Shown: positions 18,880-36,173, numbered from the stretch's first letter. The stretch is DNA of 64,000 bases from IMGVR_UViG_3300042386_001233:179822-243821; one strand, 5' to 3'. Translations and numbers: made by a program. The notes: generated by a model from the sequence alone, not told the origin.

Positions 18880-18961
18880 CGTAAGTGGTTGGCAGATAAG
18901 GACTTACGGCGACCGGGGCCGCCCCGCCTTGTCCTAAGTCTTTGGCTGGTAAGGGTTTAGG
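18880..18961. repeat. 82-bp element A2
   Basis: 29+24+29; supplies TAG stop of PRTase gene. Confidence 0.9.
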
Positions 18962-19437
18962 ATGATCGTCCCAAACTGCTTCTCAAAATATTTAGAATTA
19001 GAAGCATTGAAAGCACACTCCTCACCAAGATAGAAATATGCCCCGATACACTTTGCTCTTGGAGTATCGTCATTGATACTATCCATAATATGTTTGATAG
19101 TATTTCCAGAACAAATCAAATCATCAATAATAACGTATCGAGATGGAGTAACGCCTTCAATAAAAAATTCGCTATATCGTTTTTCATCCTTGCGAACGAT
19201 AATAATATTTTTATTAAGAATCTCTGCAATCTGTGGCACTACCATCAAACCACTTACGCCACAACAGGCAATGCTATCAAAATCATTCTCAATCTTACGC
19301 AGAGAGCAGATAGCCTTGATAATCACACCATTCCTATATTTGTGATTTAACACTCGGCTAGTATGAGCAGCCCCTTGAATTATCTTGCCGTCTGGGGTAC
19401 GCCGAAAATCATCAAGCTCTTGCTGAAAAGCGTTCAT
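18934..19437 (-). CDS. type I phosphoribosyltransferase-like protein
   Basis: YVIIDDLICSGNT PRPP-binding loop. Confidence 0.8.
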   Translation of the reverse strand: MNAFQQELDDFRRTPDGKIIQGAAHTSRVLNHKYRNGVIIKAICSLRKIENDFDSIACCGVSGLMVVPQIAEILNKNIIIVRKDEKRYSEFFIEGVTPSRYVIIDDLICSGNTIKHIMDSINDDTPRAKCIGAYFYLGEECAFNASNSKYFEKQFGTIILNPYQPKT

Positions 19438-19439
19438 AA

Positions 19440-19524
19440 AGTGTGTGGTCGGATTTGAACCGACAATCCCGATAAGAAAGAAAGGAATTAAGAATAGGGT
19501 CTAGTCCCACCTAGATGCACACAC
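19440..19524 (-). tRNA. tRNA-like gene with 13-nt pyrimidine-rich insertion in anticodon loop (pseudo or intron-containing; anticodon ambiguous)
   Basis: GTGTGTG/CACACAC acceptor, TCTA/TAGA D-stem, GTCGG-TTCAAAT-CCGAC T-arm; 20-nt anticodon loop. Confidence 0.6.
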
Positions 19525-19530
19525 AAAAAA

Positions 19531-19707
19531 TCAATCTTCATCTTCCTCAATACTAGGATAATAGTTCTTGCCATAAGATGGAACCTCGTCATCTTCTTCC
19601 TCAAGATCATTCATCCAAGGTTCTTCATCCAGACCAAGATCCTCGGTATTTTCTACCAATTCATCGTAGTCATAGTTATAGCCGTCATAGTAATCTTCAT
19701 ATCTCAT
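19531..19707 (-). CDS. hyperacidic small protein, 58 aa
   Basis: hand-translated; 24 D/E vs 2 K/R; own promoter. Confidence 0.65.
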   Translation of the reverse strand: MRYEDYYDGYNYDYDELVENTEDLGLDEEPWMNDLEEEDDEVPSYGKNYYPSIEEDED

Positions 19708-19731
19708 ATTTCTACTCCCTTTCTTACCTCT

Positions 19732-19759
19732 ATTCTACACCAACAATCGTCACTGTCAA
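19732..19759 (-). promoter_or_regulatory. sigma70-type promoter TTGACA-16-TAGAAT
   Basis: direct match. Confidence 0.6.
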
Positions 19760-19760
19760 G

Positions 19761-19833
19761 TGGGCCCTCGGGGACTCGAACCCCGAACCTATCGGTTAAA
19801 AGCCGAATGCTCTGCCAATTGAGCTAAAGGCCC
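19761..19833 (-). tRNA. tRNA-Lys(TTT)
   Basis: canonical cloverleaf, CTTTTAA loop. Confidence 0.92.
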
Positions 19834-19839
19834 GCCTTA

Positions 19840-20016
19840 TTATTCGGTTACGGTAATTTCCTCGTAAGAATAACTTTGGATATTTTCGGTTGTAAAATCA
19901 TACAGCTTGTCGAAAACATCGACCCAATCAAAATCCTCTTGCATAGAGAGAGTAATTTCGGCCAGAGATTTACCATCCTCAGTCAGAATATCATAGATGC
20001 GAAGGTTCTTCATCAT
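19840..20016 (-). CDS. hypothetical acidic protein
   Basis: ORF after promoter 20039-20067 and RBS. Confidence 0.6.
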   Translation of the reverse strand: MMKNLRIYDILTEDGKSLAEITLSMQEDFDWVDVFDKLYDFTTENIQSYSYEEITVTE

Positions 20017-20038
20017 CACTTTCCTTTCTTGTTCCAAC

Positions 20039-20067
20039 AGTCTACCATACCAATATCGTCCTGTCAA
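20039..20067 (-). promoter_or_regulatory. sigma70-type promoter TTGACA-17-TAGACT
   Basis: direct match; CGATA in spacer. Confidence 0.65.
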
Positions 20068-20086
20068 CACCCAAAACTTTAAGATT

Positions 20087-20134
20087 CTCGCTGACTATCG
20101 CCAAGACCACCAAATCCGTAGGATTAGCAGAAAC
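20087..20134. repeat. 48-bp repeat family B, copy 6
   Basis: gap-free alignment to family. Confidence 0.8.
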
Positions 20135-20137
20135 AAA

Positions 20138-20209
20138 TGACCCCACTGGGTTACGCTCCCAGGTCTCCGGCGTGAAAGGCCAGCGTACTAACTACTATAC
20201 TATGGGGCC
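20138..20209 (-). tRNA. tRNA-Glu(TTC), non-canonical T-loop AGCGTAA
   Basis: cloverleaf, CTGGC-CTTTCAC-GCCGG. Confidence 0.8.
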
Positions 20210-20244
20210 GCACTCGCAACTCAAACATCAGCCTCCGATTAGCA

Positions 20245-20273
20245 ATCATACATCTGTTATCGGCAGTTGTCAA
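20245..20273 (-). promoter_or_regulatory. sigma70-type promoter TTGACA-17-TATGAT
   Basis: direct match; CGATA in spacer. Confidence 0.65.
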
Positions 20274-20291
20274 GGCCAGCCTTTAGAAAAT

Positions 20292-20373
20292 CCTAAGTCT
20301 TTATGGTACAAGCACTTACGTCGAAGGCGGTCCGCCACATTTGTTCTAAGTCCTTTCATACCAACAACTTAGT
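20292..20373. repeat. 82-bp element A3
   Basis: 29+24+29; last base coincides with tRNA-Tyr discriminator. Confidence 0.9.
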
Positions 20374-20454
20374 GGTAGATGCTGGATTCGAACCAGCGAA
20401 GGCAATGCCAGCAGATTTACAGTCTGCCCTCGTTGTCCACTTGAGTAATCTACC
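20373..20454 (-). tRNA. tRNA-Tyr(GTA)
   Basis: cloverleaf with long variable arm. Confidence 0.92.
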
Positions 20455-20458
20455 TAAA

Positions 20459-20545
20459 CGGCTGGAACAGGATTCGAACCTGTGGACGGTTTTAATCGTC
20501 ACATCTTTAGCAAAGATGCGCATTAGACCACTCTGCCATCCAGCC
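20459..20545 (-). tRNA. tRNA-Ser(GCT)
   Basis: cloverleaf, long variable arm, G73. Confidence 0.92.
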
Positions 20546-21224
20546 TCAGTTCTTTTCTATTAGTATTTATCCCGTATTCTTTTGCCCATTTTCTTACAGC
20601 ATTATCTGATACGTCAAATATTGCAGCAGTTTGTGTCCAATTATTCTTTATAAGTAACGCTATTAATTCTTCTTTTGATGGTCTTTCTTTTACTTTTCTT
20701 CTATTTATTTTTGCACAAGTATATGAGCAGTATTTTTTATTGTATGTATTATTGTAACAAACAACACATGCATTGTATTGTTTTTTTTGTTTTTTTCTAG
20801 AGATAGACGATTCTAGATCTACTGCTCTATAGGTCTGTTGTTTTATATTAGTTCTAGATTCTTTATATCCATTTAACTCTTCATGTAGTTCTCTATGACA
20901 GTTAGAGCATAACAATAAACACTTATCCGCTTCTTGTGTTAATTTTTTCCAACTCTGAGTATTTCCATTACTAGACAATCCAAAATCTTTTTCGTTTGGA
21001 TCCTTATGATGGAAATCTAAAGCTGAAACGCACTTATTATAACCGCACTTTTCACACTTTCCACCCTTATAGTCTACTAAATCTTTTTTGAGTCTTTTTC
21101 TTTTTCTACTAACAGCATCCATCCTGCATTTAGTACAACGATAATATCCTCTATTTTCCAGAATAAACTTTACATCACCATGATGTTTACAGTTTCTAGT
21201 TATATACCTATCTTTATTTTCCAT
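20523..21224 (-). CDS. HNH endonuclease with C-terminal HTH-like domain
   Basis: CEKCG..LDFHH..KCLLLCSNCHRELH; 3' end overlaps tRNA-Ser. Confidence 0.85.
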   Translation of the reverse strand: MENKDRYITRNCKHHGDVKFILENRGYYRCTKCRMDAVSRKRKRLKKDLVDYKGGKCEKCGYNKCVSALDFHHKDPNEKDFGLSSNGNTQSWKKLTQEADKCLLLCSNCHRELHEELNGYKESRTNIKQQTYRAVDLESSISRKKQKKQYNACVVCYNNTYNKKYCSYTCAKINRRKVKERPSKEELIALLIKNNWTQTAAIFDVSDNAVRKWAKEYGINTNRKELRLDGRVV

Positions 21225-21242
21225 GACCTATTTTTCTAAAAG

Positions 21243-21314
21243 CTGTGGGAACTGGTTCTGCCCCAGTATCTTACACTTTAACAGAGTGCCGCATTACTGT
21301 TATGCTATCCCACA
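21243..21314 (-). tRNA. tRNA-Asn(GTT), non-canonical T-loop GGCAGAA
   Basis: cloverleaf GCACT-CTGTTAA-AGTGT. Confidence 0.8.
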
Positions 21315-21385
21315 ATGGTATGTCTTGATCGTTATACCATATAATACACCAAAGTTCGATTTTTAATCTGTTTTTCAATTAAATA

Positions 21386-21458
21386 ATCCGCGGGGTGGAT
21401 TTGAACCACCACTCAGCTGATCCAAAGTCAGCCGCTTTGCCAGTTAAGCTACCGCGGA
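21386..21458 (-). tRNA. tRNA-Gln(TTG)
   Basis: cloverleaf, U1-A72. Confidence 0.9.
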
Positions 21459-21463
21459 ACAAG

Positions 21464-21536
21464 AGCCAGTGGCAGGAGTTGCACCCGCGACATTCAAATT
21501 ACAAATTTGACGCTCTGCTGACTGAGCTACACTGGC
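21464..21536 (-). tRNA. tRNA-Thr(TGT)
   Basis: cloverleaf; T-loop TGCAACT. Confidence 0.85.
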
Positions 21537-21552
21537 ATACTACTAATTATAC

Positions 21553-21714
21553 TCAATAGTCCCCATTCTCGCAAGCCCTGCGATTTTCAGCGGATCGGGT
21601 TCGGGTTCGCTTGGGGCGATTGTCCATAACGGTATGACGGTGTTCCTTGTGACCCGTAGGAACTTGCCACTGCGGTCGAACCTTGATTTTGATATGGTTG
21701 CGTTTGGGTCGCAT
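21553..21714 (-). CDS. small basic protein
   Basis: MRPKRNHIKIK...DNRPKRTRTR; overlaps next ORF in another frame. Confidence 0.45.
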   Translation of the reverse strand: MRPKRNHIKIKVRPQWQVPTGHKEHRHTVMDNRPKRTRTRSAENRRACENGDY

Positions 21715-21961
21715 ATCGTCGTTGTTGTGGAGCGTAATCATGCCATTGTCCATTTTCGTGTAAGTAGAAAACCTTGTCAATATTAGGATCGTAAGCCATC
21801 AGACAGTATTGTACCGGATAAACTGGCTTTGTCAATACTTGTTTTTGCTCTTGTGAAGGATGACGCAAAGGTGGAATTTTTATATCACCCTTTTGGTAGT
21901 CCTTAACCCCATTATACGCCAGACCCACCACAGCAATCAATATCCCAATCCACTGGATCAT
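21587..21961 (-). CDS. membrane-anchored/secreted hypothetical protein
   Basis: N-terminal hydrophobic helix, RBS GGCGAG. Confidence 0.55.
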   Translation of the reverse strand: MIQWIGILIAVVGLAYNGVKDYQKGDIKIPPLRHPSQEQKQVLTKPVYPVQYCLMAYDPNIDKVFYLHENGQWHDYAPQQRRYATQTQPYQNQGSTAVASSYGSQGTPSYRYGQSPQANPNPIR

Positions 21962-22051
21962 TCTCTCGCCCTTTGTTGATTCCCTTCTCGTTCTCATATC
22001 CTTATTATCGACCAATCACCACCCTAAACTTTAGGAGTTTTCTGGAATTTC

Positions 22052-22133
22052 TCTAAGTCCGCATCCTGCAACAACTTACGTCAAATCCGGCCGCCCCCGC
22101 TCGCCCTAAGTGCTTATGCAGTAAGGGTTTGCG
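22052..22133. repeat. 82-bp element A4
   Basis: 29+24+29. Confidence 0.9.
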
Positions 22134-22304
22134 GAAAGTGTTACATATCCACTTCTGTCCTAATATACTCCATATCCTTCTCACACTTTGTGCAAAAGGG
22201 TTCGCCATTTTCGGAATAGAACCAAGGTTCAACATAAACTAGATTATCACAATCTGCACATTCCCACAAGTGCCTTACTTTTTTATCGTCTATTTTTGTC
22301 CACA

Positions 22305-22535
22305 TTATTCAATACTCCATCCGGCATCTTTGAGAATATGAGTAGTATGCAACACACAAGTTAATCCATCAGCATTTGTATAGTTTCTATATCCGCGTTC
22401 ATCAAGGTAGATATGTTCATCCAGCGTGTCGTTTTCATTTGTTTCCCATATAGCATCCATCGCAGCATCCCTCGGACATTTGTTGCAGGAATAAATTAGT
22501 TCTAGTGTCCCACATTTGATATAATACTTTGCCAT
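22305..22535 (-). CDS. hypothetical protein
   Basis: co-oriented ORF. Confidence 0.6.
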   Translation of the reverse strand: MAKYYIKCGTLELIYSCNKCPRDAAMDAIWETNENDTLDEHIYLDERGYRNYTNADGLTCVLHTTHILKDAGWSIE

Positions 22536-22537
22536 GA

Positions 22538-23107
22538 TTATCCCCTGTCTCTAAATTGTTGGCAGTGAACACAATTACACGCCCCATAACCATCAACATC
22601 TTCATCAGCATCATAATCAAACTTTCCATAAATATCTTCATCCCAATCAGTAAAACTCTCAATCCCAAGGTCAATCACAACCGGAACCCATGATCCTTTG
22701 CGTCGAACATAACCAAAGTTACCCTTGTGAGAATCATTATACTCTAAGCCATGCTCACCCAAATCATAAACTAGCTCAGAGATAGTAGTACCGTTCTTAC
22801 ATTCGCTCTGAAAACATTCACCATCACAATCCTCATCATGACATTCCGGCATAGTACGAGCCACTTCGGTCAAATAACCATGAGCAGTCAACTCACCATC
22901 ATGCCTACGAATCATACCAACATCCCCATATACCATAGGAGCCAAATTAAACTCGGCCAGATATTTTTGAACCCGATGGGCAAACTCTGCTTCTTGTTTA
23001 TTCTCAAATTCTTTAAAGCCCACACGTTTACGGCCAATCTTTTTGTCTTTAATAATATAGAAAGCATTTTTACTTCCTGCATCATCATACAATCCAACGT
23101 AGCTCAT
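22538..23107 (-). CDS. minimal protein-kinase-like (RIO/APH-type) protein
   Basis: GFK (beta3 Lys), DSHKGNFG catalytic loop, VIDLG metal-binding loop. Confidence 0.55.
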   Translation of the reverse strand: MSYVGLYDDAGSKNAFYIIKDKKIGRKRVGFKEFENKQEAEFAHRVQKYLAEFNLAPMVYGDVGMIRRHDGELTAHGYLTEVARTMPECHDEDCDGECFQSECKNGTTISELVYDLGEHGLEYNDSHKGNFGYVRRKGSWVPVVIDLGIESFTDWDEDIYGKFDYDADEDVDGYGACNCVHCQQFRDRG

Positions 23108-23140
23108 AGCTTTCCCTTTCCAAGTTGGTGATACTCCACC

Positions 23141-23169
23141 ATTCTACAGTATCTTATCGACAAATGCAA
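23141..23169 (-). promoter_or_regulatory. sigma70-type promoter TTGCAT-17-TAGAAT
   Basis: direct match; CGATA in spacer. Confidence 0.6.
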
Positions 23170-23188
23170 TAGTGAAACTTGAATAATC

Positions 23189-23270
23189 TCTAAAGTCTTA
23201 TGAGTCAAGGACTTACGACCGATCCGTCCGCTCGCCCTTGCCGTAAGTCTTTTACTGACAAGGATTTATA
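23189..23270. repeat. 82-bp element A5
   Basis: 29+24+29. Confidence 0.9.
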
Positions 23271-23324
23271 GAAAATCTCCTCTCCCCGTCAATTTTTGGT
23301 GTATTATTATTTAAAGGAGCTTTT

Positions 23325-23915
23325 ATGAAAAAAACACCCCAGTCCAAGATTGATAATAATTGTAAATGGGCTAAAAATAATGTTAATAAAGTACGTCAAT
23401 ATAAACGCAAATACAAACACGAACAAAAAAGATTAGCCAGAGAACATATTAAATTCATAAAAGAACTTTCTGGTTGTAAAACTTGTGGAAATAAAAATAT
23501 CCACTGTCTAGATTTCCATCATCGCCCTAAAACTAAAAAGAAAAATACAGTATGTAATCTTGTACGTCATGGATATTCTCTTGAAATAATTAAAAGAGAA
23601 ATAAAAAAATGTGATATTATTTGCTCTAATTGCCATAGAACATATCATTACACTGGCAAGTATATGAGGAATAAAAAAGGTGCCTTAGTACATACTATTA
23701 AATCAAATAGTAAGTGCTTATATTGTAGTTGTAATAATATAGAATGTCTAGATTTTCATCACACAGATGACAATAAAGAACATAGTATAGGTGCAATGAT
23801 ACGAGATAAAGCCGTATCTATAGAACAGTTAAAAACAGAGATTGAAAAATGTATCATACTCTGCTCTAACTGTCATAGAACGCTTCATGCTAATGACAGG
23901 GAAAAAGAACATTAG
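23325..23915 (+). CDS. HNH endonuclease with two tandem HNH modules
   Basis: two copies of CxxC..CLDFHH...KC..xCSNCHRTxH. Confidence 0.8.
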   Translation: MKKTPQSKIDNNCKWAKNNVNKVRQYKRKYKHEQKRLAREHIKFIKELSGCKTCGNKNIHCLDFHHRPKTKKKNTVCNLVRHGYSLEIIKREIKKCDIICSNCHRTYHYTGKYMRNKKGALVHTIKSNSKCLYCSCNNIECLDFHHTDDNKEHSIGAMIRDKAVSIEQLKTEIEKCIILCSNCHRTLHANDREKEH

Positions 23916-24600
23916 GCTTATCTTTATCGAGACACATATTGCAAGCCTGACTATCCTTTGTTCCAGTGCATGTAACAAATGAACGACCACGACGAATCTC
24001 TGGACAAGTGATAAACTTTTCACCTTCAAGTATTACCAGTTTCGGTAGAGCCTGACGCCATGCGTCTGCCTTTGCTTTATTTTTGGGTCGCTTTGGTGCA
24101 ATTTTTTGGTCGCTGTCACACCATGCGAACTTGGTAAAACCCTTAGATTTTGCAATCTTCATATGTTCACCATTATGAATACTAGCAAAGATAGAAAAAT
24201 ACTTGCCAAGTTGTGCTGGAATACGCTCGTCATAAACATGGGTATAAAACCACATTTTTGGCAAAGTATCACCATCGGCCAGAATACTATCGCAAGCCCA
24301 GACTACATTCTCTACAAAGCTAATATCAAGTTCGCCATTCAGCAACCAATCGCCACGTTCCATAAATCGAATACTACGATTACGACGCTTGGCTTCTAGA
24401 ATCATAGAGCGGATACGATTCTTTTCTGTGATAAGATTCTGCATACCAGCAGGGCGAACACCCGGATAAATCTTCTCAGTGTTTTCGGCATAACAACCAT
24501 TATCAAGAAATGCACAGTCTGGCGGGCAAGTATCCCCAACCGGGCGAGAAACTACCAGACAATTTTTGCCGAGCTTGTCATTACCTTCAGCGTACTTCAT
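23890..24600 (-). CDS. GP88-like Cys-rich phage protein
   Basis: GNDKLG, TCPPDC..GCYA, C-terminal CP...C....C..C pattern. Confidence 0.6.
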   Translation of the reverse strand: MKYAEGNDKLGKNCLVVSRPVGDTCPPDCAFLDNGCYAENTEKIYPGVRPAGMQNLITEKNRIRSMILEAKRRNRSIRFMERGDWLLNGELDISFVENVVWACDSILADGDTLPKMWFYTHVYDERIPAQLGKYFSIFASIHNGEHMKIAKSKGFTKFAWCDSDQKIAPKRPKNKAKADAWRQALPKLVILEGEKFITCPEIRRGRSFVTCTGTKDSQACNMCLDKDKPNVLFPCH

Positions 24601-24621
24601 GTTCTTCTCCTGTGTCTACTG

Positions 24622-24650
24622 ATTCTACACTATGGTATCGGCATAGTCAA
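24622..24650 (-). promoter_or_regulatory. sigma70-type promoter TTGACT-17-TAGAAT
   Basis: direct match; CGATA in spacer. Confidence 0.7.
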
Positions 24651-24678
24651 GCGAAAAACTTCAAAAAATTATTCTTGA

Positions 24679-24760
24679 TGCAAGTTGTTGTGAAATAAGG
24701 ACTTACGACGAACCGGGGCGGCCGGGCTTGTCCTAAGTGCTTATGCAGTAAGGGTTTATG
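24679..24760. repeat. 82-bp element A6
   Basis: 29+24+29; site-2 N19 identical to A4. Confidence 0.9.
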
Positions 24761-24765
24761 ACAAA

Positions 24766-24839
24766 CGAGAGCGACGGGACTCGAACCCGCAACCTCTAGC
24801 GTGACAAGCTAGCGATCTAACCAATTGATCTACGCCCCC
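24766..24839 (-). tRNA. tRNA-Asp(GTC)
   Basis: canonical cloverleaf. Confidence 0.92.
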
Positions 24840-24844
24840 AATAA

Positions 24845-24916
24845 TAGCCCCAAGAGGAATCGAACCTCTAACCAGTGCTTAGAAGGCACTTGTTATATCC
24901 ATTTAACTATGGGGCC
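24845..24916 (-). tRNA. tRNA-Arg(TCT)
   Basis: canonical cloverleaf. Confidence 0.92.
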
Positions 24917-24981
24917 GCAATACCGCAAGCCCCCACGGCGTCCCGTGGAGGCTCGCAGCCATTATAACTCCTTAGAGTCGA

Positions 24982-25239
24982 TCACGCAACTGCTTCAGTA
25001 GTTTCCTTTTCTACCTTACCGTCATGGGCATCACCAGCCTGTTCAGCAGTCACACCCGTAACCCTCGCTCGCCACACCTTATAACCTTGCTCGCTGAAAG
25101 CCTTGACCTCACCGGCCTTGACATTAGCGTGAACATCGCCAGGAAGGCTATCGCTCAGGCAATCACGAATCGAATCAACCACGCCGTCACGATCAAGCTC
25201 ATCGGCCACAACATCAACCACAAAACTAAACTTCTTCAT
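24982..25239 (-). CDS. hypothetical protein
   Basis: ORF with GGAG RBS. Confidence 0.65.
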   Translation of the reverse strand: MKKFSFVVDVVADELDRDGVVDSIRDCLSDSLPGDVHANVKAGEVKAFSEQGYKVWRARVTGVTAEQAGDAHDGKVEKETTEAVA

Positions 25240-25375
25240 CTTACATTCTCCAAAAAGTGTTACAGTTACCAAATCGTTCTAGTATCAGTATACGCTACTG
25301 TTACCCACTTGTCAAGTCCGTCGTGATGGTTTCTGTTGTTGGCATCATCGCGGAGTCTTGTCTCGTGATACTCTC

Positions 25376-25404
25376 ATTCTACAGTATAGTATCGTCATTG
25401 TCAA
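25376..25404 (-). promoter_or_regulatory. sigma70-type promoter TTGACA-17-TAGAAT
   Basis: direct match; CGATA in spacer. Confidence 0.75.
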
Positions 25405-25443
25405 GCCGGAACTTGAGTGTCCCTCAAAAATTTTTGTTTTTGT

Positions 25444-25525
25444 CCTAAGTTGTTTGCTGATAAGGACTTATGTCAAATTCGGCCCGCCCCGTTTGCCGTA
25501 AGTCTTTACAGCATAGGGGTTTAGG
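25444..25525. repeat. 82-bp element A7
   Basis: 29+24+29; abuts stop of bL12-like gene. Confidence 0.9.
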
Positions 25526-25900
25526 TTATGAGAGATAACCCTCACAACCCAATCCAGCCAGATCACGCAGCAGTGCCTCTGCCGCTTCGGGCGTTTTCAG
25601 CATCATGCTCTGCTTGGTTCCTGCCGGTGCCGGATACCACTTGTCGTACTTCCAACCACCAACCAGAAAGTCGGTCCAATCCTTTGCCTCTTTCAGTCCC
25701 CACCCGGTGTGAAGACGAATAGCTTTGATGCAAGGGATACGATTATCCGTATTCATTCCAGCAGTAATCGTCACACAACGACGCTGGTTCACACCCAGTG
25801 CAACTTCCAACGAGCAAACAATCTTCTCGAACATGTCGAGACTGCAACCGTTGGCAATCATGTTCAGAGACTCACGGACGCTCAGTTCGACTTTGATCAT
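25526..25900 (-). CDS. ribosomal protein bL12 (L7/L12) C-terminal-domain-like protein
   Basis: NRIPCIKAIRLHTGWGLKEAKDWTD resembles KIxVIKxVRxxTGLGLKEAKxLVE. Confidence 0.7.
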   Translation of the reverse strand: MIKVELSVRESLNMIANGCSLDMFEKIVCSLEVALGVNQRRCVTITAGMNTDNRIPCIKAIRLHTGWGLKEAKDWTDFLVGGWKYDKWYPAPAGTKQSMMLKTPEAAEALLRDLAGLGCEGYLS

Positions 25901-26381
25901 AAATTCCAAAACTTTCTGTATACTTAGGGTCTATCTCGTAAATGCCGTCAAAATTTCCGTTACGTTCTTCCAGAATATGTACCTGTCGCCCATCGGTAAC
26001 TAAGGTGTCATACTCACTGTTATCCCAAACAAATTCACCACCATCACTCTCCCTACGCCAATGTACGTCTTTGATTGGGTTATAATACAACTTCTCAAGA
26101 TTGTCAATAGGCAAAGAGGGATAAAAATCCTTGCGAAGCATAACTTCTTCACACTGCACCCAACCACTAACATTCTTTTTCTGTTTCTTATTGACCCATT
26201 TTGCCCTAGCTACCTTATTTACCAGCTTGCAACCACGCATCTCTAACTGGTATTCTGTAGGATCTACATAAAATTGGTCAACCCTTTTCTTACCCTGCAT
26301 AATATTTACTTGCCACTTCCGATAGTTCTGCCCATTGAGCAGATGGAATCGTACTTCGGCGTGTTTTTCGACCGTTTTCAT
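25872..26381 (-). CDS. hypothetical protein
   Basis: 169-aa ORF. Confidence 0.7.
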   Translation of the reverse strand: MKTVEKHAEVRFHLLNGQNYRKWQVNIMQGKKRVDQFYVDPTEYQLEMRGCKLVNKVARAKWVNKKQKKNVSGWVQCEEVMLRKDFYPSLPIDNLEKLYYNPIKDVHWRRESDGGEFVWDNSEYDTLVTDGRQVHILEERNGNFDGIYEIDPKYTESFGIYDQSRTERP

Positions 26382-26701: not shown

Positions 26702-26783
26702 CGTAAAGTCTTTAGAGATAAGGACTTACGTCGAAACCGGCCCGCCCGATTTGCTCTAAGTCGTTATGTAGCGGTAACTTATG
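26702..26783. repeat. 82-bp element A8
   Basis: 29+24+29; supplies TAG stop of 26756-26890. Confidence 0.9.
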
Positions 26784-26890
26784 TACCACCAACCACAATC
26801 TCCGCATAAACTCCAAACAAGACCATGCTTATCAACAGTATACATAATTTCATTACAGTTGCCACAACCACACATGTTAAAAGTTTTCAT
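26756..26890 (-). CDS. small zinc-ribbon protein
   Basis: CGCGNC...CGDC. Confidence 0.5.
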   Translation of the reverse strand: MKTFNMCGCGNCNEIMYTVDKHGLVWSLCGDCGWWYISYRYITT

Positions 26891-26894
26891 AATT

Positions 26895-27152
26895 TCAACC
26901 ACTAGGATAATCTGGTGGGTAAGGCTGTTCTGGTGGTGGTGGTTTTGGTTGCCCCTCATCGGGTTGCCAGTATGGAGCATCCATATAATCTACATTACCG
27001 GGAGCTTCACTACAATCAATATTGTGAATACAAAAAGGATCATTATAGTTTATCCTATATGTTCCACGCCACACACCAATAGGCTCACCATAATAGATGA
27101 TCTTCTGACCATTAATAGGACGACGAGGTCCGTGGAAACTAATCCATTCCAT
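26895..27152 (-). CDS. hypothetical protein
   Basis: MEWIS..P.. N-terminus, Pro-rich tail. Confidence 0.6.
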   Translation of the reverse strand: MEWISFHGPRRPINGQKIIYYGEPIGVWRGTYRINYNDPFCIHNIDCSEAPGNVDYMDAPYWQPDEGQPKPPPPEQPYPPDYPSG

Positions 27153-27668: not shown

Positions 27669-27741
27669 ACCAGATAACAGGGTTTGAACCTGTAACTCCT
27701 CTCATCTCTGAGTGGAACTCTGCCATTTGAGTTATATCCAG
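27669..27741 (-). pseudogene. tRNA-like element with non-canonical anticodon arm
   Basis: intact acceptor, D (ACTC/GAGT) and T (ACAGG-TTCAAAC-CCTGT) arms; no 7-nt anticodon loop. Confidence 0.6.
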
Positions 27742-28451: not shown

Positions 28452-28490
28452 GAGGCTTCTGTAGGAATTCCAAAAATTTTTTAGTATTGA

Positions 28491-28572
28491 CGTAACCCTA
28501 TGATACACAAGCACTTACATCAAAGTCGGCCGCCCGCCCTATCCCTAAGTTCTTTAAGGATAAGGACTTACG
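28491..28572. repeat. 82-bp element A9
   Basis: 29+24+29. Confidence 0.9.
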
Positions 28573-28573
28573 A

Positions 28574-28753
28574 TCAGTAGTCTTCAGCCTCAATAGGCTC
28601 GTCGGCAGAGTAATTGGAGTTGGTCAACACTTCTGGCCTATACTTACTCAACTTTTTATCCAGACACTCCAAACAAACCCTACCCAGTGGAATTCCCCTA
28701 GCATCACTTTCCCACCAACTTTTCTTGCCAGACCCACATGGACAAACTCTCAT
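28574..28753 (-). CDS. small SEC-C-motif-like protein, 59 aa
   Basis: hand-translated MRVCPCGSGKKSWW...CLEC. Confidence 0.6.
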   Translation of the reverse strand: MRVCPCGSGKKSWWESDARGIPLGRVCLECLDKKLSKYRPEVLTNSNYSADEPIEAEDY

Positions 28754-28762
28754 GATATCCCC

Positions 28763-29566: not shown

Positions 29567-29648
29567 CGTAAAGTGTTGTGAGATAAAGACTTACGACTCG
29601 CGGGGCGGGCCGACCTCGCCCTAAGTCCTTTGGTGTCAAAGAGTTAGG
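29567..29648. repeat. 82-bp element A10
   Basis: 29+24+29. Confidence 0.9.
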
Positions 29649-29682
29649 GGTTGGTCAGTTAGTAGGCAGAGACTGCTAGTTT

Positions 29683-30087
29683 TTAGAACAGGTTAGCAAA
29701 CCCGCTCTTGAACAAAGCACCGGCCAGCAACGGCTTTCGGCACTTCGTTACACGTTCTGCGTAGAAATTACGCACCTTACCATCCGCAGTTCGACACGTT
29801 ACCAGATTACTGGTACGCACAAACTCAGGATCATTGATACGATACCGACTCTTGCGATTGAGTCTCGCAATCTGATCGGCAGTCAACGTCTGCTTGCCAA
29901 TCACCTTAGCAAGAAAACGCTCATGCGTTCCATGCAAAGGCTGCTCGTAAACAAAGTTGAAAACCTGACCCTCTTGGGCATTCGCCAAGCTAGCTTTCGA
30001 TCCACCATAGACCGAATAGAAGACGAAACCCACAACAGCAACGGCAGCAGCCGCAAAAATCGCACCAAACAGAATCACATCGTTCAT
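29683..30087 (-). CDS. membrane-anchored WYL-like domain protein
   Basis: TM helix; FNFVY...R..; RNFYAERV resembles RxFRLDRI. Confidence 0.5.
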   Translation of the reverse strand: MNDVILFGAIFAAAAVAVVGFVFYSVYGGSKASLANAQEGQVFNFVYEQPLHGTHERFLAKVIGKQTLTADQIARLNRKSRYRINDPEFVRTSNLVTCRTADGKVRNFYAERVTKCRKPLLAGALFKSGFANLF

Positions 30088-30516: not shown

Positions 30517-30598
30517 CGTAAGTCTTTATTCGATAAGGAGTTACAACAATCTGGGGCGCCCGCCCTTACCCCAAGTTCTTTGGAGTTAAGGACTTGCG
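30517..30598. repeat. 82-bp element A11
   Basis: 29+24+29; abuts TGA stop of nuclease gene. Confidence 0.9.
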
Positions 30599-31144
30599 TC
30601 AAGCTTTCACTTTCTGCTTTTTCTTTTTTGTTACGGGCATCTTGAGCTTTTTCCAAGCTGTTCCTTCAAGATTACGAAAAGAAGAAGTAGTAACATCGAT
30701 CTGGCTTGCCTTAGAACGATGATTACCAACAAACTCCCTCGCTGTCGCTTTGGTCATCCATCGGACTTTAGGCCCATTAGGAGTAACATATACCAGAAAA
30801 AGAATATCAAACTTAGACAATTGCACATGCTTGAATGAAAATTTATATCTAGTAATTTTCTTAGTCCTGCTACTAACCAGAGGAGTAGCTAAAGCTGATT
30901 TCACTTCAATCCTAACATCCTTATTCAAGGTAATGTCGTGGGAATGAGATCCACCATGATAGCTTGTCTTGTGCTTCTTCAGCAGTCCATCCCTAACCAT
31001 CTTTTCAATTGCATGACCACGAAACTGCGACCCCATCTTAGAGAGTTTATATGCTGATTCGCTCTTGGATGGAGAGAAAATAGCAGGCCGCTTCAATCCC
31101 TTGAGTTCTGGAAGCACACGACTCAAATCTTTCATCGTGAACAT
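30599..31144 (-). CDS. PD-(D/E)XK restriction-endonuclease-like protein
   Basis: GHAIE ... HDI ... RIEVKS catalytic pattern. Confidence 0.6.
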   Translation of the reverse strand: MFTMKDLSRVLPELKGLKRPAIFSPSKSESAYKLSKMGSQFRGHAIEKMVRDGLLKKHKTSYHGGSHSHDITLNKDVRIEVKSALATPLVSSRTKKITRYKFSFKHVQLSKFDILFLVYVTPNGPKVRWMTKATAREFVGNHRSKASQIDVTTSSFRNLEGTAWKKLKMPVTKKKKQKVKA

Positions 31145-31223: not shown

Positions 31224-31305
31224 CACAATCCTATGCAAGATAAGGACTTACGTCAAATCCGGCTCCCCGCGTCGGCCCTAAGTGCTTGAACACAAAGGGT
31301 TTACG
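31224..31305. repeat. 82-bp element A12
   Basis: 29+24+29. Confidence 0.9.
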
Positions 31306-31320
31306 ACGAGAGATTATTTT

Positions 31321-32036: not shown

Positions 32037-32118
32037 CATAAGTCCTTACTGCTAAAGGATTTACGTCAAATCCGGCCCGCCCCGCCAGCCCTAAGTGCTT
32101 ACGCACAAAGGGTTTAGG
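32037..32118. repeat. 82-bp element A13
   Basis: 29+24+29. Confidence 0.9.
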
Positions 32119-32126
32119 GCGAGTGC

Positions 32127-33088: not shown

Positions 33089-33117
33089 ATTATACTCTTA
33101 TTATCGGCCAGCGTCAA
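33089..33117 (-). promoter_or_regulatory. sigma70-type promoter TTGACG-17-TATAAT
   Basis: direct match; CGATA in spacer. Confidence 0.75.
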
Positions 33118-33179
33118 GCAGAAACTTGGAAAATTCCAGAATATAATTTCATGCCAAAGACGAAAAATCTTTTAGTTAA

Positions 33180-33261
33180 CGTAAAGTCTTGGTGCATAAA
33201 CACTTACGCTTCGCGGGGGCGGCCGGACTCGACGTAAGTCCTTACAGGTGAAGGAGATACG
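33180..33261. repeat. 82-bp element A14
   Basis: 29+24+29; contains stop of 33242-33430. Confidence 0.85.
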
Positions 33262-33430
33262 TCATAGTGCAGCCAATAATAAAACACACCCCCCACAATA
33301 TGTAGTCACTCACTTTCATCATTTTCCTCCATATACATGATATTTGACATACTAGCGTACAGTACAATACCACAAATATAACCGAAAGCAACACTAATAA
33401 AGTCGAACTGATACATCCGTGTATCTCCAT
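33242..33430 (-). CDS. small membrane protein (start uncertain)
   Basis: hydrophobic ORF. Confidence 0.4.
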   Translation of the reverse strand: MEIHGCISSTLLVLLSVIFVVLYCTLVCQISCIWRKMMKVSDYILWGVCFIIGCTMTYLLHL

Positions 33431-33443
33431 TTTGTTTAAGTGG

Positions 33444-33632: not shown

Positions 33633-33634
33633 AT

Positions 33635-33838: not shown

Positions 33839-33919
33839 ACTTTTCCTCTTTGTTGTTAGTTCTCGTTTTCCCTATACCTATTATCGACATTCTACCATAT
33901 CAACCTTTAGCCTGCAATA

Positions 33920-33937
33920 CCTTACAGTATCGATAGG
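33920..33937. promoter_or_regulatory. 18-bp palindromic operator family C, copy 1
   Basis: CCTTAC-AGTATC-GATAGG, 2 bp upstream of -35. Confidence 0.55.
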
Positions 33938-33944
33938 TTGGCCT

Positions 33945-34157
33945 CTAACCCCTCTTAGGGGCTACGAGATCAACCCTCACGATTTCCTTGGTGTCGAAAC
34001 CCTGAGAACGCATATACTGGTAAACCGCACGGTCTGAACCGCAACGGTAAACTCTATAGGCTTTCCCATTCTTCATATGCACGATATGATCGTAAATATA
34101 AATAGAGGGAAGCGAACGGGTGAAACTTTCGACTGAAACTGACTCTCTCATCTTCAA
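33945..34157 (-). CDS. hypothetical protein
   Basis: ORF after perfect promoter. Confidence 0.55.
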   Translation of the reverse strand: MKMRESVSVESFTRSLPSIYIYDHIVHMKNGKAYRVYRCGSDRAVYQYMRSQGFDTKEIVRVDLVAPKRG

Positions 34158-34180
34158 CTCTCTTTCTTTCTTGTCCTACG

Positions 34181-34209
34181 ATTATACATCTATTATCGTC
34201 CAGTGTCAA
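34181..34209 (-). promoter_or_regulatory. sigma70-type promoter TTGACA-17-TATAAT
   Basis: perfect consensus; CGATA in spacer. Confidence 0.8.
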
Positions 34210-34230
34210 GCTATTTCTAGAGAAAAGAAT

Positions 34231-34248
34231 CCTTACAATATCGTAAGG
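34231..34248. promoter_or_regulatory. family C operator, copy 2
   Basis: CCTTAC-AATATC-GTAAGG. Confidence 0.7.
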
Positions 34249-34249
34249 T

Positions 34250-34331
34250 TGCAAGTTGTTGCGTCATAAGGAGTTACATCAAATCGGGGCGGTCGCGTTT
34301 GCCCTAAGTCCTTATAGGGTAACGCTTTAGG
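34250..34331. repeat. 82-bp element A15
   Basis: 29+24+29. Confidence 0.9.
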
Positions 34332-34364
34332 TCAACTGCTATATGTTTGTGCAGTAGTGATCGT

Positions 34365-34739
34365 TCATTCATCACTCTTGAAGCTGAACGGGCTGAGTTC
34401 CAGATGGGCGACCACACCATACTGTTTGGTCAGTTCCTCGATACGTTCACGGCTTCCCGGCTTTCCAACCGGAACGATCATGGTATCCTCACCCCCCACA
34501 TAGCGGGGGTCAGCCTTTTCCTTGCGAACCTTGCCAATGTTCTTCAGTGCGGTACGATTGAATTTGAGTACCTTTTCGGTCACAACGTAACGCTTGTGGT
34601 CAGTCACACCGTGAACGTAGTCAACGTCGATGATGCACTGCTCATCGGTCACTTCGTGGCGAACTGGAATCGCGATACCCTTGAAGATCATACGGGCTTG
34701 ACGCTTGGCATTTTCGATGATTGGATACTTGGTTTTCAT
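34365..34739 (-). CDS. hypothetical protein
   Basis: GC-rich ORF; VGKPGSRERIE motif. Confidence 0.7.
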   Translation of the reverse strand: MKTKYPIIENAKRQARMIFKGIAIPVRHEVTDEQCIIDVDYVHGVTDHKRYVVTEKVLKFNRTALKNIGKVRKEKADPRYVGGEDTMIVPVGKPGSRERIEELTKQYGVVAHLELSPFSFKSDE

Positions 34740-34779
34740 TGTCTTTTTCTCTAAGGGTCTATCGTTCTCTTGTGCGATC

Positions 34780-34808
34780 ATTATACCAAACTGATTTTAT
34801 CGTGTCAA
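34780..34808 (-). promoter_or_regulatory. sigma70-type promoter TTGACA-17-TATAAT
   Basis: perfect consensus. Confidence 0.8.
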
Positions 34809-34826
34809 CCTTACAATACCGTTAGG
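34809..34826. promoter_or_regulatory. family C operator, copy 3
   Basis: CCTTAC-AATACC-GTTAGG directly abutting -35. Confidence 0.65.
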
Positions 34827-35007
34827 CCCAGGGATGGCCGTAGGCATCAACTGCGGGAGCTAGCTCATCGTCCGAAAAATATGCGTTCATACTTTCGGTT
34901 ACGGTTACTTCCCACACATTACCCTCATCGTATTCCCAGCCTACGATTTTGCCAAACTTTTTCTCTTTTCCCCACATGAACGATACGCTGTCACCAATTT
35001 CAAACAT
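34822..35007 (-). CDS. small SH3/KOW-like hypothetical protein
   Basis: MFEIGDSV..GKIVG.. Confidence 0.6.
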   Translation of the reverse strand: MFEIGDSVSFMWGKEKKFGKIVGWEYDEGNVWEVTVTESMNAYFSDDELAPAVDAYGHPWA

Positions 35008-35047
35008 TCTTTTCTCTCTTTCTTTCTTCTCTATGTCTTATATCGAC

Positions 35048-35076
35048 ATTATACCATGCTCATCTTGAGCTTGCAA
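35048..35076 (-). promoter_or_regulatory. sigma70-type promoter TTGCAA-17-TATAAT
   Basis: direct match; CGATA just downstream of -10. Confidence 0.7.
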
Positions 35077-35163
35077 GAGAAATCTAGAAATTTTATTGTC
35101 AAGAATTTTTGACAAAAGAATCGTCTATTTTCTATCCTATTGGCACAGCATTTGCTAGGTGAA

Positions 35164-35245
35164 CGTAAAGTGTTGCAGCATAAGGACTTACGTCGATCCC
35201 GGCCCGCCCGCCTCGCTGTAAGTCCTTTACAGACAAGGCTTTATG
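35164..35245. repeat. 82-bp element A16
   Basis: 29+24+29; abuts TAA stop. Confidence 0.9.
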
Positions 35246-35545
35246 TTAACTCACCACCATACGATCCTCAAACGGTGTGCCGTCTTTTAGGTACCATTCG
35301 TAGTTCTTCTGGTATACCTGTACGGGCGAATACTGGTTGATACGCTTCTTAGTGGTGTGCGTATGCCATCCACCACTATTGAGCATAACAGTATCGTCGG
35401 GATAAATCACCACGACATTCGTACCATGCAACTCTATTGCAACGCTACCATCGGCCTGGATATAGGCATAGGTATTGTTGCCAACCTTGCGAGTATCCTT
35501 ATTAGTCTTACCACGAACCATCTTTACTGCTTCAAAGTGTGTCAT
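35246..35545 (-). CDS. conserved phage hypothetical protein
   Basis: LHGTNVV..LNSGGWHTHTTKKRIN motif. Confidence 0.75.
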   Translation of the reverse strand: MTHFEAVKMVRGKTNKDTRKVGNNTYAYIQADGSVAIELHGTNVVVIYPDDTVMLNSGGWHTHTTKKRINQYSPVQVYQKNYEWYLKDGTPFEDRMVVS

Positions 35546-35806
35546 TTTGTTTACCAGCTTTCGCTAATGATTCCTAGTAATTGTTGAAGAAACTGTAAAA
35601 CTTCTTTGATATTGTATGTAGCATAATCTACATAACCATCAGGCAGATACCTAGACATATTCCCTCAGTCGTGAAGAATGGATTGAATAGCGTTACCCAC
35701 CTCGTGGGCGGTGTACGAGATGAAACCAGCAAAAGCAATCAAGGCAAACAACTGAACGTATTCGATAGTCGTAATCATTGGGATTCCTTTTCTTTCTTGT
35801 GTTCTT

Positions 35807-35835
35807 ATTCTACACCTATTATCGACCAACGTCAA
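35807..35835 (-). promoter_or_regulatory. sigma70-type promoter TTGACG-17-TAGAAT
   Basis: direct match; CGATA in spacer. Confidence 0.7.
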
Positions 35836-35855
35836 GCTCTAGCAATAGTTTTCTT

Positions 35856-35873
35856 CCTTACAATATCGTAAGG
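35856..35873. promoter_or_regulatory. family C operator, copy 4
   Basis: identical to copy 2. Confidence 0.7.
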
Positions 35874-35875
35874 TT

Positions 35876-35957
35876 CATAAGCCTATATGAGATAAGGACT
35901 TACGTCAGATGCGGGCGCCCGGCCTCGCCCTAAGTGTTTATAGGGTAAGGCTTTAGG
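35876..35957. repeat. 82-bp element A17
   Basis: 29+24+29; abuts TGA stop. Confidence 0.9.
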
Positions 35958-36173
35958 TCATGAGGCGTGAATGAAGACCTTTTCGCTTACTGTACGGTTA
36001 GTCACTGTCACGATCCAATTCTTTCCGCTACCATCCTCACGCATGATACCATTGATAAGGCCCACATGAGCGTTACCCTTTGGGTCGAGCACGCAGTGAT
36101 ACTTACCAGCTCGCATAGCAGAAAAAATCTTATCAAGGTTGTTCGTCACAGTTTTGTAGTTAGTCTGAAGCAT
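35958..36173 (-). CDS. hypothetical protein
   Basis: ORF with RBS after promoter. Confidence 0.7.
   Translation of the reverse strand: MLQTNYKTVTNNLDKIFSAMRAGKYHCVLDPKGNAHVGLINGIMREDGSGKNWIVTVTNRTVSEKVFIHAS

What the first reader, a model, noticed from the sequence alone, without database searches (positions are those of the whole stretch)
18880..35960. Genes end exactly at, or inside, the 82-bp element
Stop codons abut the element with zero gap at A7 (25526), A11 (30599), A16 (35246) and A17 (35958), and with 1 bp at A9. The conserved CTAAG supplies the TAG stop at A2 and A8, and A14 contains a TAA stop. tRNA-Tyr's discriminator base is the last base of A3, and tRNA-Asp ends 5 bp from A6. 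The flanking triplet extends the half-site to TGACGTAA/TTACGTCA, so the element itself provides the stop. Integron attC sites overlap cassette stop codons in the same way (established). Precise junctions argue for site-specific insertion rather than random placement of operators.
Basis: partly seen in the sequence, partly recalled or inferred. Interest (0 to 1): 0.7.

Follow-up and report, generated by a model that had tools for sequence, protein, structure and literature searches.

The report
Repeated palindrome module upstream of phage promoters
In an uncultured 244-kb lake phage, 18 copies of a ~90-bp double-palindrome element sit directly after gene ends and just upstream of strong early promoters. 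Genes do stop at or inside it, but packed genes and a stop-rich motif explain this better than integron-like insertion.

Summary
All 18 copies lie in window 17.6-36.7 kb and nowhere else in the complete 243.8-kb phage genome. Four genes use T[TGA/TAA]C at element bases 2-4 as their stop. One stop straddles the edge, two or three use the TAG or TAA of the second site, and two tRNAs end at the edge. Among 247 usable unique copies from related metagenomic phages, about 65% have the stop within 6 nt of the element or inside it.

The integron-like interpretation is not supported. The genome has no integrase, resolvase or Y1 transposase. The elements have no target-site duplications and no base-pair covariation. 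The arrays are collinear between relatives.

The element is four 16-bp sites (TTGnCnTAAGTCCTTA) arranged -> <- [GC-rich core] -> <-. In 89% of copies a sigma70-like promoter follows, at distances quantised by about 10.7 bp. One relative carries an unrelated palindrome pair at the same junctions, again abutting the same stop codons.

My best reading is a PeSL-like composite regulatory module. It holds protein-binding sites phased with an early promoter and also serves as a homology anchor for recombination. Genes run into it because they are packed without gaps and its consensus closes all three reading frames.

The parts
17669..17754 (-). A1, full element. It is preceded by a true intrinsic terminator at 17772-17805 and has no strong promoter downstream.
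18880..18965 (-). A2. The upstream PRTase-like gene (18934-19437) reads 32 nt into it and stops at the TAG of CTTAG.
20292..20377 (-). A3. The 3' end of tRNA-Tyr (with CCA) overlaps its first bases, and its promoter drives tRNA-Glu.
22052..22137 (-). A4. The upstream stop lies 3 nt before it.
23189..23274 (-). A5. It is part of an ~800-bp segment, with a + strand ORF at 23325-23915, that is absent from relative L016.
24679..24764 (-). A6. tRNA-Asp ends at its TTGTCA flank.
25444..25529 (-). A7. The stop TAA of gene 25526-25909 is element bases 2-4. The position is conserved in 36 of 37 unique orthologs.
26702..26787 (-). A8. Gene 26756-26980 reads into it and stops at the TAG of CTTAG.
28490..28575 (-). 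A9. The TGA of gene 28574-28753 straddles the edge.
29567..29652 (-). A10. The upstream stop lies 30 nt before it.
30517..30602 (-). A11. The stop TGA of gene 30599-31144 is element bases 2-4.
31224..31309 (-). A12. The upstream stop lies 11 nt before it.
32037..32122 (-). A13. The upstream stop lies 4 nt before it.
33180..33265 (-). A14. Gene 33242-33430 stops at the TAA of site H2.
34250..34335 (-). A15. The upstream stop lies 29 nt before it. An extra small palindrome CCTTACnnnnnnGTAAGG follows.
35164..35249 (-). A16. The stop TAA of the Kyano_Gp96-like gene 35246-35545 is element bases 2-4.
35876..35961 (-). A17. The stop TGA of gene 35958-36173 is element bases 2-4.
36584..36669 (-). A18, the most upstream copy, after the subtilase-like gene 36790-38397.
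18823..18851 (-). Example of the sigma70-like promoter that follows each element (TTGACA-17-TAGAAT, conserved CGATAAT in the spacer). Equivalent promoters lie downstream of A3-A18.

Best explanation
The element is the upstream half of a composite regulatory module that heads nearly every early transcription unit in a variable early-gene and tRNA region of an uncultured freshwater jumbo phage.

On the coding (minus) strand the module reads, in order:
- the upstream stop codon or tRNA end;
- four 16-bp sites TTGnCnTAAGTCCTTA arranged -> <- (7-nt spacer), then a 16-bp GC-rich core, then -> <-;
- a UP-like A/T tract;
- TTGACA-17-TAGAAT;
- a ribosome-binding site and start codon.

What is shown:
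- The four sites are conserved as double-stranded sequence, not as a hairpin.
- The element sits at a helically phased distance from the -35 hexamer.

What I infer:
- A sequence-specific dimeric protein, from the phage or the host and so far unidentified, binds the two palindromes.
- In doing so it controls or insulates the adjacent host-RNAP early promoter.

Why genes end at or in the element:
- Genes in this genome are packed with zero or negative gaps.
- The consensus carries TGA (base 2), TAA (base 7) and TAG (base 30) in the three frames, so it closes any frame that reaches it.

Because the element plus promoter is the only sequence conserved between neighbouring modules and between co-infecting relatives, it also acts as an anchor for homologous recombination. 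That is what makes its 5' edge a mosaic boundary.
For: Location and number:
- 18 copies, all in one orientation and all within 19 kb of a 244-kb genome.
- About 480 copies (290 unique) sit at the same genomic place in 60+ related IMG/VR contigs.

Sequence rather than structure is conserved:
- TAA and CTT(A) are 97-100% invariant in each site, while the spacers vary.
- The core is conserved only in composition: 233 distinct sequences among 290 copies.
- For every possible pairing (H1:H2, H3:H4, H2:H3, H1:H4, core), Watson-Crick pairs at variable columns are no more frequent than chance.
- Paired cells are 65.8% against 66-68% in shuffles.
- RNAalifold finds no consensus structure on either strand.

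Link to the promoter:
- 263 of 297 unique copies have a strong sigma70-like promoter within 160 nt downstream.
- The distance to the -35 falls in classes 10-12, 19-23, 29-35 and about 49-56 nt. The best period is about 10.75 bp, with Rayleigh p of about 1e-16 on 94 cluster-level values.
- The steps between classes come from 10-11-nt insertions at two different places.

One palindrome type per genome:
- The window's type is concentrated in the array (32 of 47 matches to the 10-mer), and the L055 type is absent from this genome.
- Relative L055 has only CTGCCAnnnTGGCAG pairs at orthologous junctions.

Packing and recombination:
- Genes within cassettes overlap by 1-4 nt.
- Recent indels are patches bounded by within-gene homology on one side and by the element edge on the other.
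- The phage has its own sigma factor, which fits a switch from host-RNAP early transcription to later phage-directed transcription.
Against: - No binding protein is identified. No HTH_3 or HU-family gene was found, and most cassette proteins have no family.
- Relatives replace one or both palindromes with unrelated palindromes or a GC hairpin. That pattern also suits an RNA hairpin function.
- Some junctions have a promoter without any element (gA12 in L055; about 13 promoters in the window), so the element is not obligatory.
- The phasing could partly reflect the UP-like tract rather than the element itself.
- No transcript data could be obtained.
Confidence: 0.5

Rival explanations
1. The element acts as RNA. 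It forms stem-loops (H1:H2, GC core, H3:H4, or the long H2-core-H3 hairpin) at the 3' end of each transcription unit. These terminate or attenuate read-through and protect the mRNA or tRNA precursor against 3' exonucleases, as shown for the stem-loops of T4-like PeSLs.
For: - PeSLs have the same order of parts (stop codon, G-run/C-run stem-loop, AT-rich tract, sigma70 promoter, SD), and their stem-loop terminates in vivo (PMC2839356).
- The elements fold more stably than shuffles (mean z about -1.8 to -2.1).
- The array contains no canonical terminator, and only one flanks it, just outside the A1 end at 17772-17805.
- The elements start right at stop codons and tRNA 3' ends.
- Relatives swap in unrelated palindromes or a GC hairpin followed by a T-run at the same place.
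- In the 11-nt spacing class a T-run directly follows the H3:H4 stem.
Against: - There is no covariation, and uncompensated changes occur at variable stem positions.
- RNAalifold finds no consensus structure.
- None of the 18 copies passes a simple terminator scan.
- Arm sequences are strictly conserved while the core drifts, which a plain hairpin does not need.
- An RNA element would not be expected to show helical phasing with the -35.
- Half elements (H1-H2 only) exist.
Confidence: 0.27
2. The element is a four-segment, translation-sensing attenuator. H1, H2, H3 and H4 can pair 1:2, 2:3 or 3:4. A ribosome terminating at the stop in H1 masks H1 and so decides which hairpins form. Read-through into the next cassette would then depend on translation of the upstream gene.
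For: - All four segments are mutually complementary.
- The stop codon sits preferentially at base 1-2 of H1 (68 of 247 copies).
- The inner segments H2 and H3, which would each need two partners, are the most conserved.
- The L055 type also has two identical palindromes.
Against: - Two copies follow tRNAs, which are not translated.
- Many stops lie 30 nt inside the element or 5-30 nt upstream of it.
- In most copies H3:H4 is not followed by a U-tract.
- L065-type elements lack 2:3 complementarity.
- There is no covariation.
- Each element is followed by its own strong promoter.
Confidence: 0.08
3. This is the first reader's model: an integron-like cassette system. The element would be an attC-like site used by a site-specific recombinase to insert or excise gene cassettes.
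For: - The element has two pairs of inverted sites with short spacers around a variable centre, as in attC in duplex form.
- Stop codons overlap its first site.
- Cassette content varies between relatives, with one tandem cassette duplication and one case of a possible element-to-element deletion.
- Homology breakpoints concentrate at its 5' edge.
Against: - The complete genome has no integrase, resolvase or Y1 transposase. The only PF00589 hit scores 24 bits, below the cut-off, and lies in an ATP-grasp enzyme.
- Sequence is conserved, not structure, which is the opposite of attC.
- No cassette is found at a different relative position in 60+ arrays.
- Recent indels are small ORFs without an element. 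They are bounded by within-gene homology, which is typical of homologous recombination.
- The element is linked to the downstream promoter, not to the upstream gene.
Confidence: 0.05
4. The element is a non-autonomous mobile element, of MITE or REP/BIME type, that has spread into gene ends.
For: - It is short, palindromic, repeated and intergenic, and it lies next to stop codons.
- Its palindrome-linker-palindrome layout resembles a BIME.
Against: - There are no target-site duplications.
- There is no transposase or RAYT.
- All copies lie in one 19-kb region, in one orientation, at fixed phase to promoters.
- Orthologous positions are conserved across relatives.
Confidence: 0.03

Closest known systems
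PeSLs (promoter-early stem-loops) of T4-like phages (Arbiol et al. 2010, PMC2839356; Comeau et al. 2014, PMC4122927)
   Same: - Both are repeated ~100-bp composite modules in variable regions rich in small unknown genes and tRNAs.
- The order of parts is the same: upstream stop codon, GC-rich dyad, AT-rich tract, sigma70-like early promoter, SD, start codon.
- Both act as homology anchors for indels and replacements between relatives.
   Different: - This phage is not T4-like. Its terminase is only about 26% identical to those of Bacillus siphoviruses.
- The dyad part is a strictly conserved set of four 16-bp sites around a core conserved only in composition.
- It lies at a helically phased distance from the -35, whereas the PeSL stem-loop position varies.
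- Different lineages of the family use unrelated palindromes at the same junctions.
- Terminator activity has not been tested here.
Integron attC sites
   Same: - Both have two inverted pairs of short sites with ~5-7-nt spacers around a variable centre.
- Both lie at the 3' end of genes.
- In both, the stop codon often lies inside the first site.
   Different: - attC is recognised as a folded single strand with conserved structure and little conserved sequence. Here sequence is conserved and pairing is not maintained.
- There is no IntI, no attI and no Pc.
- Every unit has its own promoter.
- Arrays are collinear between relatives.
REP/BIME elements of enterobacteria
   Same: - Both have palindromic units in inverted pairs separated by a linker.
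- Both lie immediately after stop codons.
- BIMEs are known to bind proteins (IHF, gyrase) and to affect mRNA 3' ends.
   Different: - BIMEs are scattered across the genome and mobilised by RAYT transposases.
- Here all copies lie in one region, in one orientation, coupled to promoters, and there is no RAYT.
Multi-site operator regions upstream of phage early promoters (for example phi29 p4 sites; from my own knowledge)
   Same: - Both have several inverted-repeat protein sites upstream of host-RNAP promoters.
- Both show a phase-dependent arrangement.
   Different: - This one is repeated about 18 times per genome as a standard module.
- The regulator is unknown.

Membership tests
Integron (attC / IntI cassette array) | A tyrosine recombinase (IntI) is encoded next to the array | tested here: not met
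   A PF00589 search of the complete genome gave one sub-threshold hit (24.2 bits, cut-off 27.1), in an ATP-grasp-like ORF 60 kb away. There was no resolvase.
Integron (attC / IntI cassette array) | attC is conserved as a folded hairpin (structure conserved, sequence not) | tested here: not met
   Sequence is conserved. Pairing at variable columns is no more frequent than chance, and the covariation score is below the shuffles.
Integron (attC / IntI cassette array) | Promoterless cassettes are expressed from a common Pc | tested here: not met
   89% of elements are followed by their own strong sigma70-like promoter.
Integron (attC / IntI cassette array) | Cassettes occur in different orders and contexts, with junctions at the recombination site | tested here: not met
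   Arrays in 60+ loci are collinear, and variation is by indel or replacement in place.
Integron (attC / IntI cassette array) | The stop codon of the cassette gene often overlaps the first core site | tested here: met
PeSL-type composite regulatory cassette | A repeated intergenic motif combines a GC-rich dyad or stem-loop with an AT-rich tract and a sigma70-like early promoter, and starts at the upstream stop codon | tested here: met
   compared with the description in PMC2839356.
PeSL-type composite regulatory cassette | It is concentrated in hyperplastic regions of small ORFan genes | tested here: met
   All copies lie in one 19-kb region of small, mostly unknown genes and tRNAs whose content varies between relatives.
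PeSL-type composite regulatory cassette | It marks the boundaries of indels and replacements between close relatives (homologous recombination) | tested here: met
   HSP starts pile up at the element's 5' edge. Individual events are shown.
PeSL-type composite regulatory cassette | The stem-loop works as a transcription terminator and the promoter is active | not testable with these tools
   This needs reporter assays or 3'-end mapping. The only RNA run found was too sparse.
PeSL-type composite regulatory cassette | It occurs in T4-like myoviruses | tested here: not met
   The terminase and portal are only distantly related to known phages, and there is no near DNA match. I therefore call it PeSL-like rather than a PeSL.
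MITE / REP-BIME | Target-site duplications, a cognate transposase or RAYT, and dispersed copies in either orientation | tested here: not met
Intrinsic (rho-independent) terminator | A GC-rich stem is immediately followed by a U-tract | tested here: not met
   None of the 18 elements is flagged by the scan, whereas the real terminator upstream of A1 is.

The most novel reading that the evidence does not exclude
The two palindromes may be operators for a dedicated regulator of a jumbo-phage family that controls about 18 early promoters at once. Different lineages would then carry different operator 'dialects' (TTGnCnTAAGTCCTTA pairs versus CTGCCAnnnTGGCAG pairs) at the same junctions. That would make a regulator-operator system that is exchanged as a set across the whole array, for example to set the timing of early genes or to discriminate between co-infecting relatives. 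The regulatory cassettes would spread by gene conversion up to the stop codon of the neighbouring gene.
Probability: 0.3. Interest if true: 0.7.

Novelty: new variant of a known kind. Interest (0 to 1): 0.5.

Why it matters
It extends the idea of standardised, repeated regulatory cassettes to an unrelated family of uncultured freshwater jumbo phages. Until now these cassettes were described in T4-like phages.

It adds three features not reported for those cassettes:
- four strictly conserved dyad sites;
- helical phasing with the promoter;
- wholesale replacement of the palindrome type between lineages, with gene ends and promoters staying in place.

It gives a testable handle on early-gene control and on how variable regions are rebuilt.

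It also cautions against a tempting inference. Stop codons embedded in a repeat do not by themselves indicate site-specific insertion.

Tried and rejected
- Rfam scan of 13-38 kb: only tRNAs.
- Megablast against known phages: one 63-bp tRNA-sized match and nothing else.
- RNAalifold on both strands: no structure.
- Mutual information over 290 copies: the top pairs are alignment gaps or shared descent, not helices.
- Strand asymmetry of A.C versus G.U mismatches: it points to the antisense strand for H1:H2 and for the L055 palindromes, but it is balanced or reversed for H3:H4 and H2:H3. I did not use it.
- Triplet comparison to locate a crossover point inside elements: the relatives compared were too divergent to be informative.
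- First cassette clustering: too loose, because the promoters are shared. I redid it.
- PF00589 hit: it proved to lie in an ATP-grasp-like ORF.
- Searches for HTH_3 and HU proteins: none found.
- RNA evidence: one lake metatranscriptome held two short contigs over 29628-30038, and no run was listed for 17600-26000.
- Target-site duplication scan: negative.

Full report
**What the sequence is.** The window is the last 64 kb of a single 243,821-bp virus record with direct terminal repeats, rated 100% complete, at 35.6% GC. It encodes a terminase, a portal and a sigma-70-family sigma factor. Its terminase is only about 26% identical to those of Bacillus siphoviruses, and no known phage matches at the DNA level. 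More than 60 related contigs exist in IMG/VR, many of 200-240 kb. The only RNA run holding part of it is a lake-water metatranscriptome. I therefore treat it as an uncultured freshwater jumbo phage.

**The observation.**
- nhmmer with a profile of the repeat finds 18 full copies. All lie in window 17.6-36.7 kb, all in one orientation, and none elsewhere in the genome.
- Genes and tRNAs in this region are on the minus strand.
  - A9 is 1 nt away.
  - A2 and A8 stop at the TAG of the conserved CTTAG.
  - A14 stops at an internal TAA.
  - tRNA-Tyr and tRNA-Asp end at the edges of A3 and A6.
- The remaining copies have gaps of 3-30 nt.
- A1 follows a genuine terminator.
- The upstream ORFs are real genes, because their proteins are conserved in relatives down to 35-60% identity.

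**Anatomy.** I aligned the 18 copies and then 290 unique copies from relatives.
- On the coding strand the element consists of four versions of one 16-bp site, TTGnCnTAAGTCCTTA.
- They are arranged H1 -> (7 nt) <- H2, then a 16-bp GC-rich core, then H3 -> (7 nt) <- H4.
- TAA and CTT(A) are 97-100% invariant in each site.
- The inner sites H2 and H3 are the most conserved.
- The spacers vary freely.
- The core keeps only its composition: 233 different sequences among 290 copies.
- The TTGAC flank is part of the site, since the non-coding H3 has it most clearly. The TGA used as a stop at H1 is therefore indeed element sequence.
- TGA at base 2, TAA at base 7 and TAG at base 30 lie in the three different frames. 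Any frame that enters the element is closed within about 32 nt.

**Structure or sequence?**
- RNAalifold finds no consensus structure on either strand.
- For each of the four possible helices, and for the core, Watson-Crick pairs at variable columns are no more frequent than independent columns would give.
- The pair counter gives 65.8% paired cells, against 66.2% and 67.7% in shuffles. Covariation scores are below the shuffled mean.
- Single copies do fold somewhat better than shuffles (z about -2), but into different shapes.
- So the dyad symmetry belongs to the consensus and is not maintained copy by copy. This is what recognition of duplex DNA by a symmetric protein predicts. It is the opposite of attC sites.

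**Link to the downstream promoter.**
- Each element is followed by an A/T tract resembling a UP element and by a strong sigma70-like promoter (TTGACA-17-TAGAAT, with CGATAAT in the spacer), then a ribosome-binding site.
- Across the family, 263 of 297 unique copies have such a promoter within 160 nt.
- The distance from the element's end to the -35 is quantised at 10-12, 19-23, 29-35 and about 49-56 nt, with almost nothing in between.
- Counting each cassette family once per class gives 94 values, a best period of about 10.75 bp and a Rayleigh p of about 1e-16.
- Within orthologous groups the classes interconvert through 10-11-nt insertions at two different places.
- This argues for a constraint on helical phase between element and promoter, which is a DNA-level property.

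**Comparative test of the junction.**
- Orthologs keep the stop at the same element position over long divergence. For the A7 gene, 36 of 37 unique sequences have the stop at the same element position and the 37th lies in a locus with no detectable element. TGA, TAA and TAG interchange among them, down to 58% identity.
- About 30 of 44 orthologs of the A2 gene end at the TAG in H2.
- Family-wide, about 65% of 247 copies have the stop between -6 and +35.
- The most telling case is relative L055. It has orthologs of these genes (51-80% identity) but no element of the window's type.
- At the same junctions L055 carries two copies of an unrelated palindrome, CTGCCAnnnTGGCAG. These flank a GC-rich core and are followed by a T-rich tract and the same kind of promoter.
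- The A7 orthologs end at the same residue (…CEGYLS* versus …CEGHLS*), and the stop abuts either element type.
- The A8 ortholog in L055 lacks the seven residues that the window's gene reads out of its element.
- One junction in L055 has a promoter and no element.
- Another lineage (L065) combines H1-H2 and the core with an unrelated GC hairpin. Half elements also occur.
What sits there is an exchangeable regulatory module, and each genome uses essentially one palindrome type.

**Is it a recombination site?**
- The genome has no integrase, resolvase or Y1 transposase. The single weak PF00589 hit lies in an ATP-grasp-like ORF.
- There are no target-site duplications.
- Arrays in relatives are collinear. 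Cassettes are gained, lost, duplicated or replaced in place, and none changes position.
- Homology between relatives tends to begin at the element's 5' edge.
- Recent events are small ORFs, or diverged patches, that lie between a breakpoint inside the upstream gene and the element edge.
- In one relative an extra small ORF lies between the A16 gene and its element, with a decayed H1-H2 remnant behind the gene.
- This is the pattern described for PeSLs of T4-like phages. There, conserved promoter/stem-loop cassettes that begin at the upstream stop codon serve as sites of homologous exchange (PMC2839356 and PMC4122927).

**Why genes end at the element.**
- Inside cassettes, neighbouring genes overlap by 1-4 nt. 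Zero spacing is therefore the rule in this genome, not a special property of the element.
- With a stop triplet in every frame of the first 32 nt, a gene that loses its own stop, or is joined to the module by recombination, is simply ended by the element. This leaves a short element-encoded tail (A2, A8, A14).
- I consider this sufficient. It does not need site-specific insertion.

**Verdict.**
- The claim that the element provides the stop is right for about half the copies.
- The integron analogy is a resemblance of layout only.
- My best explanation, at confidence 0.5, is a PeSL-like composite module. Its four conserved sites are protein-binding sites phased with an early promoter, and it also works as a recombination anchor.
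- An RNA-level terminator or stabiliser role is the main rival (0.27). The two are not mutually exclusive.
- The binding protein, termination activity and promoter activity are all inferred, not shown.

Noticed in passing
window 13930-13986, 15180-15236, 16058-16114, 17474-17530, 20084-20140 (minus strand); also L055 1064-1117, 4603-4656, 11184-11237, 11390-11443: A second repeat family of ~57 nt (TTTGTCTCGCCTAATCCnnCGGATTTG...ATAGTCAGCGAGAAT) with nested inverted repeats. It is conserved even in the relative that uses a different palindrome element. It has no Rfam match, and one copy directly follows tRNA-Glu.
   Followed up: partly
L055 745-793, 1672-1720, 4420-4468, 5558-5606, 7470-7518, 11008-11056: A relative carries an unrelated element (two CTGCCAnnnTGGCAG palindromes around a GC-rich core) at junctions orthologous to the window's elements. 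All nine transitions seen in these palindromes give A.C mismatches on the coding strand, which would be G.U on the other strand.
   Followed up: partly
window 34231-34248, and just downstream of A17 (about 35855-35875) and A18 (about 36560-36583): An extra small palindrome CCTTACnnnnnnGTAAGG, related to the site motif, lies between the element and the promoter in three neighbouring modules.
   Followed up: no
window 20523-21224 (minus strand): An HNH endonuclease gene sits among the tRNA genes. This segment, with tRNA-Ser, tRNA-Tyr and element A3, is missing from relative L016, as for a homing-endonuclease insertion.
   Followed up: partly
window 23120-23950: An ~800-bp segment holding a 196-codon ORF on the opposite (+) strand (23325-23915, no family match) together with element A5 is absent from relative L016.
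   Followed up: partly
window 21243-21314 and 27669-27741 (minus strand): Rfam finds two further tRNA-like sequences (49.7 and 35.4 bits) that ARAGORN did not call.
   Followed up: no
window 17000-41000: The early region with the elements has 40-46% GC, against 33-37% in the rest of the genome.
   Followed up: no
window 17406-17445 and 17564-17599: Weak partial matches to the element (single palindromes) lie downstream of A1, as if the array decays at this end.
   Followed up: no
G000:C1:125834-125968 (outside the window): The phage encodes a sigma-70-family sigma factor (region 4 match, 44.7 bits, in a 216-codon frame).
   Followed up: no
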